From positions 59,458,001 to 59,522,000 of the forward strand of contig NW_026262690.1 in NCBI RefSeq assembly GCF_021869535.1: 64,000 nucleotides of DNA. The letters are read 5' to 3'. The translations under genes were made by a program, and so were the position numbers. The notes below the pieces were generated by a model. The model was not told the DNA's origin and ran no database searches. It saw nothing but the letters and a program-made list of their open reading frames with translations. This document shows positions 1,103 to 10,169 of the stretch, piece by piece. The stretch's first letter is position 1. Each line of letters begins with the position of its first letter. Origin of the DNA: Mytilus californianus (lineage: Eukaryota).

Positions 1103-2665
1103 TTAAAATGGTGAACCAGTGGTTACATTCCTAACTGATAAGGGCATCTGGTTTGTGATGGTGAAATATAACTTCTATACCATAATGGGCATCAAAGGTA
1201 TTTATCTAAATTTAAAACTTAAAAGTTACTTTACCAAAGTCACTAAACAATAGATGAAGTCGAAGTTACCCAAATGGTATCATCAATATATCACTTTAGG
1301 TGTCTGATTGATTGATTGTTTATTCATTTACATCCAGTGGCAAATTTGTCATGCATTTTCAGGATGACTTTATATTGAAATTAACCGAAGCAGATAGACA
1401 TAAAGATATGCAATATACAAAAGTGAATTTATATACTTTATCCAATTTCATGAATAAACATAGGCACTATTTCTATACACAGTTCTCTGACATTTTTTTT
1501 GCCTACTTGAGACTATTTAGAATGATGACTTATGATAGGCTCACTTGCCCAACAGGGAAGACTTTGGAAAAGAGGGTTTATTTAAAAATGAATAAAAAAA
1601 GTAATATGGAAAAAAAAGAGATACTGAAGCTAACTATTCACCCCTATGTTAACAATAACAATTGCACATTCATACTAAAAAATAACTGGTCCCATAATAC
1701 CTTGAACTTCATGAAAGCAACAATCAAATCTCTAAAATTATTGAATTTGTTATTACACATGATATTAATTACCAATAAAGTATTTTCATCAAAAGGTAAA
1801 CACATTGGCAAACCGTCACCAATAAATTAACCACAGAGTATTTTGAGAACATACAATACAGGTTTGATATAACAAAATTTTTGTGAAAATTGTAATTTAT
1901 CAAACTTGAAAGATGTTTAACAGTACAACTGAGTTTTATGCCAAACACGCTTCAAACTGTAAAATTTTCAACATTTAAAGTCCTAAAACTTTGTTACAAC
2001 AAACCAACAAAATTGGAAGGGATCTGTCCTTTTAGAAGTCACCGTTGTATAGAATTTGTGAAACACTCAGTTTAAGCATAATTTAAGGAAAGATATAGTT
2101 GAACAGATGGACAGAAGCATAACAGTATATCATAACATGCCTCAAAGTGATTTGTGTCTACAGATGTAGTAAAACAATGAAGATGAAAATTTCAATTATT
2201 TTTCCAATTTCACACTTAACTTTTTATTACAAACTTACACTGTTTTCATTTACTAAATTTGTCATAGCGTTAGTGATTACAATTAAAGTCCCCCTTGTAC
2301 AATCATAACTGTGTCCTATTACTACTACCCATGAATAATAGTATTTCTTAATTTTAATACTTTCATACAAAATATGTTAAAGTATTCCCACTGAAGCAGA
2401 TAAAAACTAGTATAAATTTCTATGTTGTTATTTTCTTATCAACTAAATATTTTTGTAACTGTCTTTATATGCATTTTTAATGTAAACGTAAATTAGAGAC
2501 ATTGTGGGGATCTACCGGTTTCCAAAGTTTAGAAAGTTTATTCAATTAACTTCAAAGACAAGCTTAACTTGTTACAATAAAACTTTCTCTTAACATTTAT
2601 TTTATGAAAGATTATAAGATTCTCTGTTTGCATATAAGATATTTAGTTTGCATGCTTGTATTCCA

Positions 2666-2883: not shown

Positions 2884-3755
2884 CTTGTATTCCAGTAGCT
2901 GTATATTGGTGATGGTATGAAGGCATTAATGTTAATTATGCAATGTATTACTAGTAAGTAAAGTTGAAGCAATATAAATCTAATAAGTGAAAAATAGAGA
3001 AATGAATTTGGAAATGAAATGAAACCAAATTTGAAGCACCAGCCTTGAACATAGCATTTATGGCATTTTAAGCTAGTTGTCCATTACTAAAAAAATACAC
3101 TCAAACTTAAAAGTAAAACCACAGCAAAATATTTCATACTTTATAAATTAGTTTTCAAAGAAGAATGAAAAATGATATGGATGAATATTTGAATTTTCAC
3201 TGCAGATCACAATAATATTATGCATTTCTATCAAATTATACAAATGATCAAAAGTGAAATATCTTTTGGTGAAGGCTAACAGCAATTACAAAAGTAAATG
3301 TCTGCATCAAACTTTTTCAGTTGAACATAGTTTTTAAATGTATTACACAAAAAAATTAAACAAGTCAAACATAATTTCTCATCATCTATAAAAAAAACAT
3401 TGTGTGAGTTTAAACTACATCGTACTTTCTAAAAATGACACATGTGTTCACCATGAACTCTGGGCTGACCTAATCTATAACATTTTGGCAAAGCTACAAA
3501 GCTCTTTTCAGTATGTATCATTCACTATGTATCATCATACCCATTGAATCTCAAAAATGTGTATTGCACTGTTCCCAAATGACTTTCCATCCACAAAACT
3601 GGAAACAGTCTAGCGGGAGTAATCATTAATAATGATATGAGCAAAGAAATAACAAATGGAAAGCAATCATCACATCAACAAGCATCGCAGTCACACTTAA
3701 ATCTCCATATCATAGAAAAAATTGTTATTCCTTGTAACATCCATTCTTCCTTCCT

Positions 3756-4116
3756 TCATACATACCATTCCTTTACATCTTTCTTCTTTCCTGGCTTAAT
3801 ATTAGATGCCCCTATTATTGCACCGTTACCTTGTAAACTTTTAGATTCTAAGTAAGCAAAGTTTTTACTTTCATCTACTTTATATGTTCCTTCGTCTCTA
3901 CTTCGGAATTTATACAATGCTATAATTAGAATAATTACAGTAAATGCCACACCTACACCTATTCCGATAAATAACGCTAACTTTTTCTTATCATCTTCAC
4001 GGTCTGGTGGACCCTGGGATTCTGTTCTTAAAGTAGTCACAATTATGTTAGGCTGACTTGTTTCTATGCATCCTTCAGCCCCACCTTCACATATTCTATT
4101 CATATTCTTTAATGTA
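3756..4116 (-). CDS. Nrx-1: Neurexin exon 16: TM and cytoplasmic tail with PDZ-binding motif
   Basis: ctttttttag|T ACA..; [25 protein letters not shown]; [13 protein letters not shown]; KDVKEWYV stop. Confidence 0.96.
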
Positions 4117-4656
4117 CTAAAAAAAGATAAAAACAATTAATTATTCTTTATCTGATTATTTCATAGCAACACAATAACAAGTCATAATGTGCAAAAATAC
4201 GTACTTTTAAGTTTGAATGAATTTTCTAACATGCTTACAGAAATATTTCACAATAAATGCAAGTACATAATTCATAACAACACATTAGTAAATTTCAGCA
4301 GCATAAAATAAAAATCTGTCAGCTTGACTCATCATATCGCCACTTAGCGCAAAAAAAAAAGACACAAAATACCAATGTGAGCACACTGGAAGTTACTAAA
4401 AGCTAGTACAAAAATCAGTTTCAACTAATAGATAGACAATGTTTCCAATATTTACACCTACAATGAATTTATGTAAAGACATGTTGTGTATTTTCTTTCT
4501 GTGCTTAAATAATCGTACCAATGCGCTAGTACAGCTGGTACAGTTGGTGAGTCCTTATTTTGTGAATGCTCTTTAATTTACCTTGGCCGATGTGTGTCTA
4601 GTTGTTTTGGCTGTAATTTTTGATGTGGCCTTTGTTGATGGTAGATATTTAAGTAC

Positions 4657-4847
4657 CTTGGCTGAGGGGTTTCTGGTGGTTTTGGCGTTGAGAATGTTAT
4701 GATTGTTGATGTTGGTAGAATGATGTCATCAGCTGACCCAGCACCACTGAACGTTACACATTCATCTTCATCATCACTCATGCATTCCAAGCCATCTTCA
4801 GTTGATACTATGATTTCGTCAGCAATTCCTTGCATGGGAGTTGTCTG
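4657..4847 (-). CDS. Nrx-1: Neurexin exon 15: Cys-loop and stalk
   Basis: tttttttctgcag|QTTPMQGIADEIIVSTEDGLECMSDDEDECVTFSGAGSADDII..TPQP AG|gtactt; 191 nt, phase 0 to 2; alternative in-frame donor at 4582. Confidence 0.9.
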
Positions 4848-5467
4848 CTGCAGAAAAAAAAGACTTGTAAGACAATTAAATTGACTGTAAATAGCCTTAT
4901 CTTTTTTAATTCTGTAAAATATTTGAGAATTCATGTTACAAATTACTTTCAACCTTTATAACAATAAATTTACCAAGGATTCTTTCTAGTTAATATCATA
5001 AAAACTCCATCCTACATTTTAAAACTTTACTTTTAAATGTTTGTCAAACATGCTGAAAAACAACACTGATACTCTTTAAAGCATATTATAGCATACTTCT
5101 GATAAAGTGAAGACACTGCAATAATATTGAAAATGTAAATTAATTTACTACTTGCTTCATAATTCAGGTCGATAGTTAAACTCATGCACAATCTATATTA
5201 ATGTTGATTATGTCTAATTGAAATTGTAACCCTTTATAATTAGCAGCATGCCAACAAGTTATTCATGGCTGCAATTTAGGTTTGTCTAGTTAGTGATTGT
5301 AAACATAAATTATGGTAAAACTATGGAACTTTTATAAGCCTGTTCAGATAAAAATTCTGTTAAAAAATAAATAAGTGAATACTAAATTTTTGGATTGTTA
5401 GGAAGGACTATAAATATGTAGTTTCTTGAATTTATTCATTTTTTTAAATGACTACCACTACAACTAT

Positions 5468-6616
5468 AAACTGTTAACACAGAGATATGTCTCGCCTATT
5501 TGTTATTTTTATAATGCATATGTTGAAATTAAAATAGCAATACTTTAACATGTAAGTTATGCAAATATTTAAAGTCAATGAACCATGACTGAAGGTACAG
5601 GGCTAAACAATATCCATGGAAATCAGATGTGCCAATGCTAATACAACTGCATACCAAATATCATTGACTTTTCATATTTCGTTCTCTTTAAACAAACCTA
5701 AACACAAACATTAACTTGTAAACTATGCAAAAGTTTCAAAGTCAATAAACCGTAATGAGGAGGTGGGGTTATATAATATTAGTGGAAACGAAACTTGCAA
5801 ATACCAATACTTTTGCATACCAAATATCAATGACTTATGATTAATGGTTCATCTTAAACTGACCTAATCACAAACTAATACATGTAAACTAAGCAAAAGT
5901 TTCAAGGTAAATAGACCATGACTGAGGGGTAAGGACCAAATATACTCCATGGAAATGAGATCTGCTAATGATTATACAACTGCATACCAATTATCATTGA
6001 CCTACCACTAACAGTTCCCCTTAAACTGATCTAATCACAAACTAATACATGAAAACTAAGCAAAAATTTAAAAGTCAATAGACCATGACAGAGGGGGCGT
6101 GGCTAAATAATCTCCATGGAAATGAGATAATCCAATGCTTATACAACTGTATACAAAATATCATTTACCTACCACTAATGGTTCAACAGAAACTGACCTA
6201 ATCACAAACTAATACATGAAAACTAAGCAAAAATGTCAAAGTCAATAGACCATGACAGAGGGGGTGTGGCCAAATTATCTCCATGGAAATGAGATATGCC
6301 AATGCTTATACAACTGCATACCAAATATCATTGACCTAACACTAGTGGTTCCGCAGAAACTGACCTAATCACAAACTAATACATGTAAACTAAGCAAAGT
6401 TCAAAGTCAATAAACCATGACTGAGGAGGCGGGACCAAATAATCTCCATGGTAATGAGATGTGCCAATGCTTATACAACTGCATACCAAATATCATTGAC
6501 CTACCACTAGTGGTTCACCATAAACTAGACCTAATCACAAACTAATACATTGTTGACGCCGCCGCCAGAAACAGCATACCTATGTCTCACTTTTTGACTC
6601 CGTCAAGGCGAGACAA
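5468..6616 (+). mobile_element. HINE/pearl-like family A copy 2 (6 core repeats)
   Basis: Same termini, core and hairpin as 114-1102. Confidence 0.8.
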
Positions 6617-7175
6617 AAATCAATTTAATGTTGACCATTACCTTGCAAGTGTTCAATTCTCATTTTATTCAAGAAATTGTGTTGTTTTAATATCTGATGA
6701 TGGAACCAAAATTACCCAGGTAATTCTATGGTAAGCGAGTTACTTCACCAGAACAATATTCATTTGTCTATGCTAGGGTTATTTAATTACTTGTCTTTAG
6801 AAATATTATATAACCTCAGTAATTCAAGAATTACAACATAACTCACTGTTTTAAATATTTCCTTTATTGATTAAGCCATAAAAATTCTGCTGTTTTACAG
6901 AAAGTGACGTGAAAAACTTGAACATTTATACAAAAATGATTAATTGGTTAATTCAAACTTGAACCATTCTTTAACATTCTATGTTATATTCTCTAAGACA
7001 TTTAATAAATAATGACATGTTCTACTCATTGTTAGTACATCTCAGCAGATAAATGTTATCCTATGGTTATCGATTGGATTATAAATCATATTCCAAGAAA
7101 GCAGCAACATTCCTCATCTTAAACAACAGAACATAAAGTCATTCTGGATTAGTCATTCCCACGCTAACAACTTAC

Positions 7176-7664
7176 AACAGGAGATATTTCAATGTTCAAC
7201 TTATCAGTACCATCAATAACAACAGATTGTTCTCTCCCTCTGTCTTTTGGATATTTAGCTGGATCCGGCAATTTCAGTTTATTAGATATTGTTGTAGGAG
7301 ACATTGGTGGGTTTGCTATAGGAATTACTTTATGTATTGAATCTTCGTGTAAGCTAATATCAGTCTCGACTATACTAGTATCCTTAAACTGATTTATTTG
7401 TGGAAATAGAGTAATAGCGGGATCCTCCTCTCTTAAAGGAATGTAAACTGAGTCTCCACTAAAATCGTCAATATGTGTATTTTTAACATCATCTTCATCA
7501 TCCACAGTTAGTATGATGGAAAAGTCGTCATAATAAGAGACATCTGTATTGTCATTACTTATCTCCCTTTTTTCAATTCTAGACTTTGTATTTACAATGG
7601 AATTAATTTCATTGTTATTGAGCACAGTGTCTTTACGGAATGTTTTTTGCTTGATGAATGTTTT
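7176..7664 (-). CDS. Nrx-1: Candidate 489-nt (163 aa) stalk exon: cassette exon or gamma-type isoform exon
   Basis: Open frame bounded by ttattgtag| and GTT|gtaagt, phase 0 to 0; acidic and Ser/Thr/Pro-rich; contains EKR and DDFSGD motifs. Confidence 0.65.
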
Positions 7665-7969
7665 CTACAATAAATGTTAAAATAAGAAAAAAAACTTTTC
7701 TGGCAATCATATTGCAACCTAGAAGCAAGGAGACAATGCATCACATCAATTTCCTTGGTTATACTTTTAAGTACATTACACTATTAATTTTTTTCTTTTA
7801 AAATTAACATAATAAAACTTGATTGTGTAAACACATGAAAATTAATATTGTGAATCAGTGTGCACATTGCTATAAAGTAGTGTGTTTGTCACCACTGTGA
7901 GAGGATGTGAACAAAGCAATATACTTGGTGATTAAAAAATTGATATAAATAATTCTGATTAAAACTTAC

Positions 7970-8003
7970 TCTAGTTTCTCTAGTTGACTGCATTACTTCT
8001 CTC
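7970..8003 (-). CDS. Nrx-1: Neurexin exon 14: 34-nt bridging stalk exon (REVMQSTRETR)
   Basis: cccttttttttaag-type tract|G AGA GAA GTA ATG CAG TCA ACT AGA GAA ACT AGA|gtaagt; the only good phase 2 to 0 exon I found linking exon 13 to exon 15. Confidence 0.72.
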
Positions 8004-8104
8004 CTTAAAAAAAGGGTAAACTAATTTATAGAAAATGTTATTTATATTTAGGATCATAATGCAAGTGATATTCTTTAAAAGTTCTAATATAACATGATGT
8101 GACA

Positions 8105-8532
8105 CAACTGGCCCAAGACCACAATTAATGACCGTTATCTTTGTTGGCCACTAATATAGTTCTCTGTAGTTGTAGTGTTTTTTGTTTTTTTCTTTCCTTC
8201 CCTTTCTCATTCATTTCTAAATTTCTATGAGGTGGAAATGAAAGAAAAGAGTTCAAATAAATTTTTGGATGTTTATCTTAACTATTCAGTAGCTGGAAAG
8301 AGTGATAAGGTCAGGTGCACAAAGGTAGTAATTTTAATTTTTAGAACATCTGTCAACTTTTTCATACAGTATGGATGTGTGTGGGCTGAATTAGAAAATG
8401 TCTCTATAGAATAATTTTTTCTAAATATTAGACACATTTTGTGACTTGTACGGTACGGAAGACATACAATAACTTTTGCCAAAATGTTATAAAGAACTAA
8501 TAGGAAAATTAATTGTGGTCCTGGGCCAGCTG
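8105..8532. mobile_element. Putative MITE with 24-bp inverted termini
   Basis: caactggcccaagaccacaattaa versus ttaattgtggtcctgggccagctg (2 mismatches); no TSD seen. Confidence 0.45.
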
Positions 8533-9241
8533 CCCTCTCCTGTAAAAGTAGGAACTTGATTAGTAACTCACTAGTATACAGTTATACAGTTATAACGGAC
8601 GCATTACATTTGTGTGCATTAGGGGATTAAATTTTTTTACATTTGTCTGCAGTTTTTGATTACATTTGTACATTTTGCACACATTCATTTTACAGGTAAT
8701 AGGTTAAAATAAAGATAATGCATAATAAACATGACTATAGTTATTAAATTTGAACTCATTTGTAAATTTGAACTACATATTTATATATATATTCTGAAAA
8801 AAAAATATGAAGAGATCATGTGAAATCCCGTAACAGCTTAAGCCATATATCTAACTTAATTGCGAATATTTCAGAGTGAATAGTATTCTTATTCCAAATT
8901 TTACCGAATAGTGATTGCTTTAGTAAATGATGTAAAGTTGCGTCAAGGCAGACACATGTAGTTTCGATTGACAGAAACAAATAGGGGGAAGAATCTTTAG
9001 ATTAATATATGATGGTTTTACTTTCCATATCGTCAGAACACTCAAGTCAGGGGATATTTCATGACTATGTACTATAAAAAATTACAAAGGGACTTGGACT
9101 AACGGACGGGGTACTTGTAGTTGTTTATATTTAAACATGGAAGTATTATATTGTCAATATGATACTTTCATGGTTAAATAAATATATAAAAAAAATATAA
9201 TCTATCTGCATTTACCTGTATTTATCCGAGTTTACCTGTAA

Positions 9242-9717
9242 AACTAGATATCATTGAGATGGGAGCCATCTCTGTGGGCCCCGCTGTGAATAATGTGTGG
9301 TAAAAAATTTGTATCTTTATCATTGGACATGGGGTTGTCAAATGAAACCGAAGTTTATGACCTTGACCTTTGACCTAGGAAGTTGTACATAAATTATGAC
9401 ACACCCTCTGGTGTTGGTTTATATACATGTCAAGTATAAACATTGAAATCATAATGGTTCTCAAGATATAGAGCGGACACAATCTTTACCATAGGACATG
9501 GGGTTGTCAACTAAAACCAAAGTTTTAGACCTTGACCTTTGACCTAGGAAGTTGTACATACATTATGACACACCCTCTGGTGTTGGTTTATATACATGTC
9601 AAGTATAAACTTTGAAATCATAACGGTTCTCTAGATATAGAGCGGACACAATTTGTTAAGGACGGACGGACGGACAGACTGATCACTATAGGGCGTCCGC
9701 CATTCGACAAGGCCCTA
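9242..9717 (+). mobile_element. HINE/pearl-like element, different family (2 cores of ~170 bp)
   Basis: aactag start; ccttgacctttgacc core; (GGAC)n; terminal agggc..gccct hairpin. Confidence 0.7.
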
Positions 9718-10078: not shown

Positions 10079-10169
10079 CTTTTTAGCCTTACATCACCCT
10101 CTATAGATATTCTTCTATCTCCCCCTTCTGCTGCCTTTTCTAGTAAAGGAAGACCATTAAATACAAGAC
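10079..10169 (-). CDS. Nrx-1: Neurexin exon 13: end of LNS6 (not in ORF track)
   Basis: catttgtag|(G)LVFNGLPLLEKAAEGGDRRISIEGDVRLK AG|gtgagg; 91 nt, phase 1 to 2. Confidence 0.9.

What the first reader, a model, noticed from the sequence alone, without database searches (positions are those of the whole stretch)
7176..7664. Hidden 163-aa in-frame exon in the neurexin stalk at the gamma-neurexin intron
Seen: a 489-nt stop-free frame in very AT-rich intron DNA, bounded by ttattgtag| and |gtaagt and phase 0 to 0, so it can be spliced in or out between exons 14 and 15. It encodes a basic N-terminal part ending in a dibasic site (SRIEKR), an acidic YYDDF/DDEDD block, an acid-flanked Ser-Gly (DDFSGD) and a Pro/Thr-rich stretch. 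Known: vertebrate Nrxn1-gamma starts in the intron just before the Cys-loop exon, and neurexins are HS proteoglycans. Inference: a lineage-specific switch that lengthens the stalk, adds a second GAG site and possibly a cleavage site.
Basis: partly seen in the sequence, partly recalled or inferred. Interest (0 to 1): 0.8.

Follow-up and report, generated by a model that had tools for sequence, protein, structure and literature searches.

The report
Real mussel neurexin stalk exon
The 489-base open frame is a genuine coding exon of a mussel-type neurexin gene: it is spliced into mRNA at exactly the predicted junctions and conserved in related species, so it looks like the gene's ordinary, lineage-restricted stalk segment, not a hidden switch.

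Summary
Window 7664..7176 (minus strand) is a 163-codon stop-free frame bounded by AG| and |GTAAGT, phase 0 to 0, single copy in a 1.65-Gb genome.

It is a real exon:
- Stranded RNA-seq of the window's own species shows the joints 7970>7664 (4 reads) and 7176>4847 (5 reads).
- Exon read depth matches that of the flanking exons.
- Two assembled transcripts of a sister species carry the exon between the same neighbours.
- Six further orthologous copies all keep the frame open, with lengths that are multiples of 3. All keep the phase-0 acceptor and the donor GTT|GTAAGT.
- dN/dS is 0.15-0.6 where dS is saturated. Against a closer relative the exon is 95% identical and the introns 81-83%.

The peptide has no Pfam family and is predicted disordered. 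A KR dipeptide and the block LPDPA-x-YPKDRGR are invariant. The Ser-Gly is present in only 4 of 7 copies.

The skipped junction 7970>4847 was never seen, and only one run hints at it. The exon is therefore best read as the main, mostly included stalk exon, taking the LNS6-to-membrane distance from 121/146 to 284/309 residues. The "switch", "second GAG site" and "cleavage" readings remain unshown.

I also found a real alternative donor in the next exon (4657 or 4582, 25 residues).

The parts
7176..7664 (-). The 489-nt (163-codon) stalk exon, phase 0 to 0. It has a basic N-terminal part with an invariant KR, an acidic core, and an invariant C-terminal block LPDPA-x-YPKDRGR...D-x-TD-x-L.
   Evidence: Sequence. 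RNA joints 7664>7970 and 4847>7176, and spliced contigs X3 record 1 and X5 record 7. Seven orthologous open frames with conserved splice sites. dN/dS 0.15-0.6. Exon 95.1% identical against introns 81-83% versus L006.
7970..8003 (-). A 34-nt micro-exon (G + REVMQSTRETR) that enters in phase 2 and leaves in phase 0. It is the upstream splice partner of the stalk exon.
   Evidence: Joint 7664>7970 with CT..AC ends, seen in X21 (4 reads), X3 and X5. It is 100% identical in L006, L007 and L012, where introns are 81-83% identical. A 31-nt counterpart encoding RELMSTRETR is present in the distant copy L014.
10079..10169 (-). Inferred exon encoding the end of LNS6 (GLVFNGLPLLEKAAEGGDRRISIEGDVRLK), ending in phase 2. 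It is the presumed partner of the micro-exon.
   Evidence: Sequence and frame. It is 82% identical to L014:307-415, which lies upstream of that copy's micro-exon and stalk exon. Its last letters AAG explain the 37-letter 'side' of the 7664>7970 joint. It lay outside the stretch given to read laying, so no junction was seen.
4657..4847 (-). Cys-loop exon, short form of 191 nt. It holds C-MSDDEDE-C and the FSGAGS Ser-Gly site, and is the downstream splice partner of the stalk exon.
   Evidence: Joint 4847>7176 in X21 (5 reads, 5 starts) and in the X3 contig. X5 record 7 and X7 record 15 end at 4657. Sequence. It is 95.1% identical to L006.
4582..4656 (-). A 75-nt extension of the Cys-loop exon, used with the alternative donor at 4582. 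It adds 25 in-frame residues that are rich in basic residues, His and Gln.
   Evidence: Joint 4116>4582 in contigs of X3 and X7. By contrast, X5 record 7 goes directly from 4657 to 4116. Both donors read CCAAG|GTA. There are 2 differences in 75 nt against L006. Both forms are in frame.
3759..4116 (-). Last coding exon. It holds a second Cys pair, the transmembrane helix, and a neurexin/syndecan-type cytoplasmic tail ending in EWYV plus the stop codon.
   Evidence: Pfam Syndecan domain, E 1.8e-07. Sequence. Contig pieces 3700-4116 appear in X3, X5 and X7, and X21 depth is 9-12.

Best explanation
The frame is a genuine internal coding exon of an alpha-type neurexin gene on the minus strand. It is spliced between a 34-nt micro-exon that follows LNS6 and the Cys-loop exon, and it supplies most of the extracellular stalk.

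Shown:
- It is present in mature mRNA of this species and of a sister species.
- It is included at about the same level as its neighbouring exons in the RNA sampled.
- It has been kept open, in phase and under purifying selection in at least four deeply diverged mussel-like lineages.

Inferred:
- It encodes an intrinsically disordered spacer with a basic head, an acidic core and a short Pro/Thr-rich stretch.
- It sets the distance of LNS6 from the membrane: 284/309 residues with the exon against 121/146 without.
- It probably plays the role of the poorly conserved O-glycosylated stalk of vertebrate neurexins.
- The invariant KR and LPDPA-x-YPKDRGR motifs probably act as short linear motifs for processing or docking.

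It is the regular stalk exon of this lineage rather than a silent or hidden one. Occasional skipping is possible because the exon is phase-symmetric, but it has not been demonstrated.
For: Gene identity:
- Laminin_G and EGF exons, and a Syndecan-type tail.
- Best solved match is neurexin-1-alpha, E 1.7e-92.

RNA:
- In stranded run X21 of the window's species, joints 4847>7176 (5 reads at 5 starts) and 7664>7970 (4 reads at 4 starts) have GT..AG ends on the minus strand.
- All of these reads are 'first mate on +'.
- Exon depth is about 4. Scaled to exon length, the micro-exon is about 5 and the Cys-loop exon about 5.
- X3 record 1 (3786 nt) and X5 record 7 (2161 nt) place 7664-7176 directly between 7970 and 4847, and run on to the last exon.

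Conservation:
- Seven copies are all open, 468-591 nt long and all multiples of 3.
- The acceptor AG is in phase 0 and the donor GTT|GTAAGT(T) is invariant.
- DNA similarity to the distant copies stops at the exon borders.
- dN/dS is 0.15-0.6 with dS of 0.9 or more between lineages.
- Against L006 the exon is 95.1% identical, the Cys-loop exon 95.1% and the last exon 95.5%, while introns are 81-83%.
- Sister species against the window: 5 synonymous changes, 3 conservative changes and one 3-nt in-frame deletion.
- Synteny with the micro-exon, Cys-loop and TM exons is kept in L006 and L014.

Other:
- Single copy in the genome.
- AlphaFold2 gives mean pLDDT 47.7 and no secondary structure.
- No Pfam family.
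Against: - Only one RNA run of the species itself was read, about 6% of it and of unknown tissue. Junction counts are therefore small (4 and 5 reads). A minority skipped form, or tissue-specific skipping, cannot be excluded.
- In run X7 the exon is seen only in a 545-nt contig that reads through the donor into the intron, at depth 4.4, similar to other intronic contigs there. Meanwhile a 2492-nt contig at depth 10.8 passes 4847 without joining 7176. This would fit skipping in that sample.
- The disorder prediction rests on a 7-sequence alignment.
- The role of the motifs is pure inference.
- The taxa of the related contigs are not known to me.
- I could not inspect annotated full-length mollusc neurexins for an equivalent segment.
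Confidence: 0.85

Rival explanations
1. The exon is a regulated cassette, an SS5-like switch, that is spliced in or out to lengthen the stalk, add a second heparan-sulfate/GAG attachment site (DDFSGD) and add a dibasic cleavage site (EKR).
For: - The exon is phase 0 to 0, and both the skipped and included forms are in frame.
- It lies between LNS6 and the Cys-loop, where vertebrate neurexins carry SS5 (position read; SS5 from PMC9812575).
- In X7 a long contig passes 4847 without joining the exon, and exon depth there is no higher than intron depth.
- The next exon does have a proven alternative donor, so this stalk is alternatively spliced.
- KR is invariant in 7 of 7 copies, and is multiplied 3-4 times by tandem duplication in L005 and L014.
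Against: - The skip joint 4847>7970 is not among the reported joints of any of the four runs.
- Inclusion is at neighbour-exon depth in the species' own RNA, and the exon is in the main contig of X3 and X5.
- The splice sites are strong: a long pyrimidine tract plus GTAAGT.
- The flanking introns show no raised conservation, 81-83% as elsewhere.
- The Ser-Gly is missing in L003, L015 and L004.
- The furin consensus R-x-K/R-R is met only in L015.
- No glycosylation or cleavage can be tested here.
Confidence: 0.25
2. The exon is the start of, or belongs to, a separate short transcript. This would be either a gamma-neurexin-like isoform starting in this intron or a nested gene, not an internal exon of the long neurexin mRNA.
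For: - Vertebrate Nrxn1-gamma and invertebrate short isoforms are known (PMC12665717).
Against: - All reads and contigs that reach 7664 are spliced to the micro-exon at 7970.
- X3 record 1 continues about 2.3 kb further upstream in the same contig.
- No place where many reads begin was found (tables 5, 6, 8).
- Depth in the intron just upstream of 7664 is essentially nil (table 2).
- The acceptor AG in phase 0 is conserved in all seven copies.
Confidence: 0.03
3. It is a chance open frame, a retained piece of intron, or an exonised or decayed mobile element with no coding role.
For: - AT-rich genomes do produce occasional long open frames. There is another one of 172 codons without a family at 1312-1827.
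- The same intron holds a very abundant dispersed repeat.
- The peptide matches no Pfam family.
Against: - The expected number of such frames per window is 0.02-0.05.
- It is single copy.
- It is spliced on both sides in RNA.
- It is open in seven copies although synonymous sites are saturated.
- All indels are multiples of 3.
- Similarity stops at the splice sites.
Confidence: 0.01

Closest known systems
Juxtamembrane stalk (O-glycosylated 'carbohydrate-attachment' region) of vertebrate neurexins
   Same: - Same position in the protein: between LNS6 and the Cys-loop / heparan-sulfate Ser-Gly site, ahead of the transmembrane helix.
- Low-complexity sequence that is predicted unstructured.
- The neighbouring Cys-loop exon (C-x7-C followed by SGAGS) and the tail ending in EWYV are clearly the neurexin ones.
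- Reviews describe the stalk as the part retained in Nrxn1-gamma and bound by CA10/CA11 and FAM19A (PMC12665717, PMC9812575).
   Different: - No detectable sequence similarity to anything outside seven mussel-like contigs.
- It is acidic rather than Ser/Thr-rich overall.
- With it the LNS6-to-membrane stretch is 284-309 residues. From memory, and unchecked here, that is about 2-3 times the length of the vertebrate Nrxn1 stalk without an SS5 insert.
- It has its own invariant motifs (KR; LPDPA-x-YPKDRGR).
Vertebrate neurexin splice site 5 (SS5) inserts, e.g. the Nrxn3 SS5 exon
   Same: - An exon lying in the stalk, after LNS6.
- It can in principle be in or out without breaking the frame.
- The same stalk in the mussel shows a proven alternative donor 25 residues long.
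   Different: - SS5 exons are demonstrably alternative. In Nrxn3 the SS5 exon carries a stop codon and yields a GPI-anchored form (PMC9812575).
- Here skipping was not observed, the exon has no stop, and no homology to SS5 inserts could be tested.
Proteolytic shedding of the neurexin ectodomain (ADAM10-type cleavage in the stalk)
   Same: The stalk is the known place of regulated cleavage of neurexins (PMC6683742, listed). The mussel exon has an invariant dibasic KR.
   Different: - A dibasic KR would point to a proprotein-convertase type of cut in the secretory pathway, not to a metalloprotease.
- The furin consensus is met in only one of seven copies.
- Nothing about cleavage is shown.

Membership tests
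Neurexin (alpha-type) gene | Ectodomain of repeated LNS (laminin G) domains interspersed with EGF-like domains | tested here: met
   Laminin_G_2 with E 1e-22 to 4e-30 in three minus-strand exons, two of them followed by EGF. The best solved relative is neurexin-1-alpha, 3qcw, E 1.7e-92.
Neurexin (alpha-type) gene | Single transmembrane helix and a short syndecan/neurexin-type cytoplasmic tail with a C-terminal PDZ-binding motif | tested here: met
   Pfam Syndecan domain, E 1.8e-07, in the last exon. A hydrophobic stretch is present and the protein ends in ...KEWYV before the stop.
Neurexin (alpha-type) gene | Stalk with a Cys-loop and an adjacent Ser-Gly (heparan sulfate) site | tested here: met
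   Read directly in exon 4847-4657: C-MSDDEDE-C followed by FSGAGS. The comparison with the vertebrate sequence is from memory.
Expressed internal coding exon | Both splice junctions present in RNA, on the right strand | tested here: met
   Joints 7664>7970 and 4847>7176 in stranded run X21, and spliced contigs in X3 and X5.
Expressed internal coding exon | Frame, phase and splice sites conserved in orthologues, with purifying selection | tested here: met
   7 of 7 copies are open, multiples of 3, with AG in phase 0 and GTAAGT in phase 0. dN/dS is 0.15-0.6. The exon is 95% identical against 81-83% for introns.
Alternatively spliced cassette exon (SS5-like switch) | Length a multiple of 3 and symmetric phase, so that skipping keeps the frame | tested here: met
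   489 nt, phase 0 to 0. The skipped forms translate to the stop codon.
Alternatively spliced cassette exon (SS5-like switch) | Skip junction (7970>4847) present in RNA beside the inclusion junctions | tested here: inconclusive
   It is not among the joints reported for four runs, but only 15 of 107 joints were listed. X7 record 15 passes 4847 without joining 7176.
Alternatively spliced cassette exon (SS5-like switch) | Sequence homology to vertebrate SS5 inserts | not tested
   No SS5 insert sequence was on hand. Pfam and the Atlas gave nothing for the peptide.
Glycosaminoglycan attachment site | Ser-Gly with acidic neighbours | tested here: met
   DDFSGDS at residues 66-72 of the exon.
Glycosaminoglycan attachment site | Site conserved among orthologues | tested here: not met
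   Ser-Gly is present in the window, L006, L005 and L014. It is replaced by TNQD, FDPD and FNGD in L003, L015 and L004.
Glycosaminoglycan attachment site | A GAG chain actually attached | not testable with these tools
   Needs biochemistry.
Proprotein-convertase cleavage site | Conserved dibasic K-R | tested here: met
   K32 and R33 are invariant in 7 of 7 copies. The unit is duplicated 3-4 times in L005 and L014.
Proprotein-convertase cleavage site | Furin-type consensus R-x-K/R-R | tested here: not met
   P4 is I in the window, L006 and L004, K in L003, and H or N in L005 and L014. Only L015 has R-V-K-R.
Intrinsically disordered linker | No stable fold predicted | tested here: met
   AlphaFold2 with 7 sequences: mean pLDDT 47.7, pTM 0.13, no helix or strand element. 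This is weak because the alignment is shallow.

The most novel reading that the evidence does not exclude
The exon is a regulated, tissue-specific cassette. It would be included in some tissues (runs X21, X3, X5) and skipped in others (X7). Together with the proven 25-residue alternative donor of the next exon, it would give mussels an SS5-like splice code in the neurexin stalk that arose independently of vertebrates. That code would toggle stalk length between 121 and 309 residues and bring in a conserved dibasic processing motif that could release the ectodomain.
Probability: 0.25. Interest if true: 0.55.

Novelty: new member of a known kind. Interest (0 to 1): 0.3.

Why it matters
The result fixes the 3' gene model of a bivalve neurexin: LNS6-end exon, 34-nt micro-exon, 489-nt stalk exon, Cys-loop exon with two donors, then the TM/tail exon. 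It shows that the stalk, the least conserved part of neurexins, has in mussels a long acidic segment with two invariant short motifs. The sequence is restricted to this lineage as far as the searches can see.

A 2025 review states that extensive alternative splicing seems exclusive to vertebrate neurexins (PMC12665717). The directly observed alternative donor in this stalk, and the possible cassette behaviour of the exon, are small counter-examples worth a proper isoform survey. Otherwise this is an ordinary, expressed exon, and any RNA-guided annotation should already contain it.

Tried and rejected
- Pfam scan of the peptide found no family.
- ESM Atlas by features gave no usable hit.
- The exhaustive HMMER search of 1.84 billion representatives found only short ORFs from unspliced contigs, plus one spurious repeat protein, P0005. 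No full-length neurexin with the segment was found. This says little, because only one representative per 50% cluster is kept.
- The word-indexed search with the 4-sequence profile was limited to proteins of 90-285 residues. It added three more genomic ORFs but no spliced fragments.
- A search of papers on bivalve or mollusc neurexin splicing found nothing specific.
- The AlphaFold2 model was too poor (pLDDT 47.7) to justify any fold search.
- Repeat or transposon origin is rejected, because the stretch is single copy.
- Chance ORF is rejected.
- I could not fetch the sister-species contigs themselves. What follows position 4847 in X7 record 15 is therefore unknown.
- I did not build or type spliced protein queries, so annotated full-length mollusc neurexins were not compared.
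The window has no N. Read laying was given 5,901 letters.

Full report
**Observation**

On the minus strand, window 7664..7176 is a 489-nt frame of 163 codons without a stop. It is preceded by a long pyrimidine tract ending in ttattgtag and followed by gtaagt. The full stop-to-stop frame is 166 codons.

In this 31% GC DNA, simulation expects 0.05 such frames per 64 kb and the analytic estimate is 0.02. That is suggestive but not decisive, since a 172-codon frame without any family also lies at 1312-1827 on the plus strand.

The stretch is single copy in the 1.65-Gb genome, both as DNA and as protein. It is therefore not a mobile element.

**Gene context**

The minus strand carries an alpha-type neurexin gene.
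- Three large exons are Laminin_G domains, two of them with EGF. The last exon has the Syndecan-type tail.
- One LNS exon matches neurexin-1-alpha structures at E 1.7e-92.

Reading 5' to 3' at the end of the gene:
- An exon at 10169..10079 encodes the end of LNS6 and ends in phase 2.
- A 34-nt micro-exon at 8003..7970 restores phase 0.
- The candidate exon follows.
- The Cys-loop exon starts at 4847, with C-x7-C and FSGAGS.
- The last exon starts at 4116, with a second Cys pair, the TM helix and a tail ending in EWYV.

All four splice combinations read through to the stop codon. The distance from LNS6 to the TM helix is 284 or 309 residues with the exon and 121 or 146 without it.

**RNA evidence**

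I laid four runs on window 3700-9600.

Run X21 is stranded RNA-seq raw reads of the window's own species, of which about 6% was read.
- Joint 4847>7176 appears in 5 reads with 5 different starts. Joint 7664>7970 appears in 4 reads with 4 starts.
- Both joints have CT..AC ends on the plus strand, which is GT..AG on the minus strand.
- All of these reads are in the orientation expected for a minus-strand RNA.
- Depth in the exon is about 4. Scaled to exon length, the micro-exon is about 5 and the Cys-loop exon about 5. The last exon is at 9-12.
- X21 shows no sequence differences from the window in the exon.

The sister species, "organism A", holds 40-48% of the exon's 31-mers in 18 runs of 8 studies.
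- X3 record 1 (3786 nt) and X5 record 7 (2161 nt) are spliced transcripts.
- In both, 7664-7176 lies directly between 7970 and 4847 and runs on to the last exon.

The skip joint 4847>7970 is not among the joints reported, but only 15 of 107 were listed. One hint of skipping exists in X7.
- The exon occurs there only in a 545-nt contig that runs through the donor into the intron (7118-7664). Its depth is 4.4, like other intronic contigs in that run.
- A 2492-nt contig at depth 10.8 starts at 4657 and passes 4847 without joining 7176.
- I could not see what follows 4847 in that contig.

**Conservation**

An exhaustive HMMER search of 1.84 billion representative proteins found four relatives, all short ORFs. 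A profile search added three more.

Their contigs are unspliced genomic pieces. DNA similarity to the distant ones stops at the exon borders, at 7159-7169 and 7675-7694.

In all six further copies:
- The frame is open.
- The exon length is a multiple of 3: 474, 543, 522, 468, 558 and 591 nt.
- The acceptor AG is in phase 0.
- The donor reads GTT|GTAAGT in phase 0.

Pairwise Nei-Gojobori dN/dS is 0.15-0.6, with dS of 0.9 or more (often saturated) between lineages. It is 0.33 and 0.29 for the two close pairs.

Against the moderately close relative L006:
- The exon is 95.1% identical, the same as the Cys-loop exon (95.1%) and the last exon (95.5%). The adjacent introns are 81-83% identical.
- L006 keeps the order micro-exon, exon, Cys-loop exon, TM exon within 4 kb.

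The distant L014 keeps the LNS6-end exon, a 31-nt micro-exon (RELMSTRETR) and the exon.

Between the window and organism A, the eight listed substitutions are 5 synonymous and 3 conservative. The only indel is a 3-nt deletion.

This is the signature of a coding exon under the same constraint as its neighbours.

**What it encodes**

No Pfam family matches and the Atlas gave no look-alike. AlphaFold2 on the 7-sequence alignment gives mean pLDDT 47.7 and no secondary-structure element. The segment is best read as an intrinsically disordered linker.

It has three parts:
- A basic head, residues 1-35, pI 10.3.
- An acidic core, residues 36-110, net charge -17.
- A tail with a short Pro/Thr-rich stretch.

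Invariant in all seven copies are K32-R33, Y74-x-P76, D81-P82, and the block L-P-D-P-A-x-Y-P-K-D-R-G-R followed by D-x-T-D-x-L.

In L005 and L014 the KR-containing unit is tandemly multiplied 3-4 times.

The acid-flanked Ser-Gly is present in only 4 of 7 copies, which is 2 of 4 deep lineages. The furin consensus is met in only one copy.

**Interpretation**

The best-supported reading is that this is the regular stalk exon of neurexin in this lineage, expressed and conserved. I take it as the local counterpart of the poorly conserved stalk of other neurexins. It acts as a long flexible spacer carrying a few short linear motifs.

It is not hidden in any biological sense. The "switch" is unproven, the "second GAG site" fails the conservation test, and "cleavage" is only a possibility.

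The gamma-neurexin link has no support:
- No cluster of read starts was found.
- There is essentially no depth in the intron just upstream of 7664.
- The reads and spliced contigs that show what lies beyond 7664 join it to 7970.

**Comparison with the known**

The closest analogues are the vertebrate neurexin stalk and the SS5 inserts in it, including the Nrxn3 SS5 exon with its stop codon and GPI anchor (PMC9812575). Stalk shedding is a further analogue (PMC6683742, listed).

A 2025 review states that extensive alternative splicing seems exclusive to vertebrate neurexins (PMC12665717). Against that background, the directly observed alternative donor of the Cys-loop exon is a small but real example of stalk splicing in a mollusc.
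- The donor is at 4657 in X5 and X7, and at 4582 in X3 and X7.
- The difference is 75 nt, or 25 in-frame residues.
- The extension is conserved in L006, with 2 differences in 75 nt.

**Limits**

- The tissue of X21 is unknown.
- The species are coded.
- The species of the related contigs are unknown; a search for their accessions in papers found nothing.
- I could not compare annotated full-length mollusc neurexins. The word-indexed search is bound to 0.55-1.75 times the query length, and I did not type spliced sequences.
- Whether existing annotations of this genome already list the exon could not be checked. Any RNA-guided annotation should include it.

Noticed in passing
window 4582-4657 (minus strand): The Cys-loop exon has two donors, both reading CCAAG|GTA, at 4657 and 4582. 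Both are used in sister-species transcripts: X5 and X7 use the short form, X3 and X7 the long form. The long form adds 25 in-frame residues rich in basic residues, His and Gln, between the Ser-Gly site and the second Cys pair. The 75-nt extension has only 2 differences against L006.
   Followed up: partly
window 7970-8003 (minus strand); L006:995-1028; L014:1228-1258: A 34-nt micro-exon (REVMQSTRETR) links LNS6 to the stalk. It is 100% identical in a relative whose introns are 81-83% identical. A 31-nt version is present in a distant relative.
   Followed up: partly
window 5470-6650: The intron holds a dispersed element of about 1.15 kb built of six tandem units of about 167 nt. The first look found at least 7,900 candidates in the genome, and the scored copies are 89-97% identical. 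It is heavily represented in RNA, with depth in the hundreds in X21 and tens of thousands in contig sets, mostly in one orientation. Another abundant repeat lies at 9216-9600.
   Followed up: partly
L006:1889-2392, against window 7113-7172: In the relative L006, the 57-60 nt of intron just downstream of the exon's donor are expanded into about ten tandem copies (a minisatellite). The window has one copy.
   Followed up: no
L005:380-937 and L014:2026-2616: In one lineage the KR-containing unit of the exon, of the type NVKREINLDGR, is tandemly repeated 3-4 times in frame.
   Followed up: no
window 1312-1827 (plus strand): A 172-codon stop-free frame lies downstream of the neurexin 3' end. It has no Pfam family. 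Its origin was not examined further.
   Followed up: partly
runs X1-X14 (organism A): The neurexin transcript carrying this exon is assembled even in very small contig sets (4-5 million letters). It has word depth of about 80 in X3. This suggests unexpectedly high expression in whatever tissues those studies sampled.
   Followed up: no
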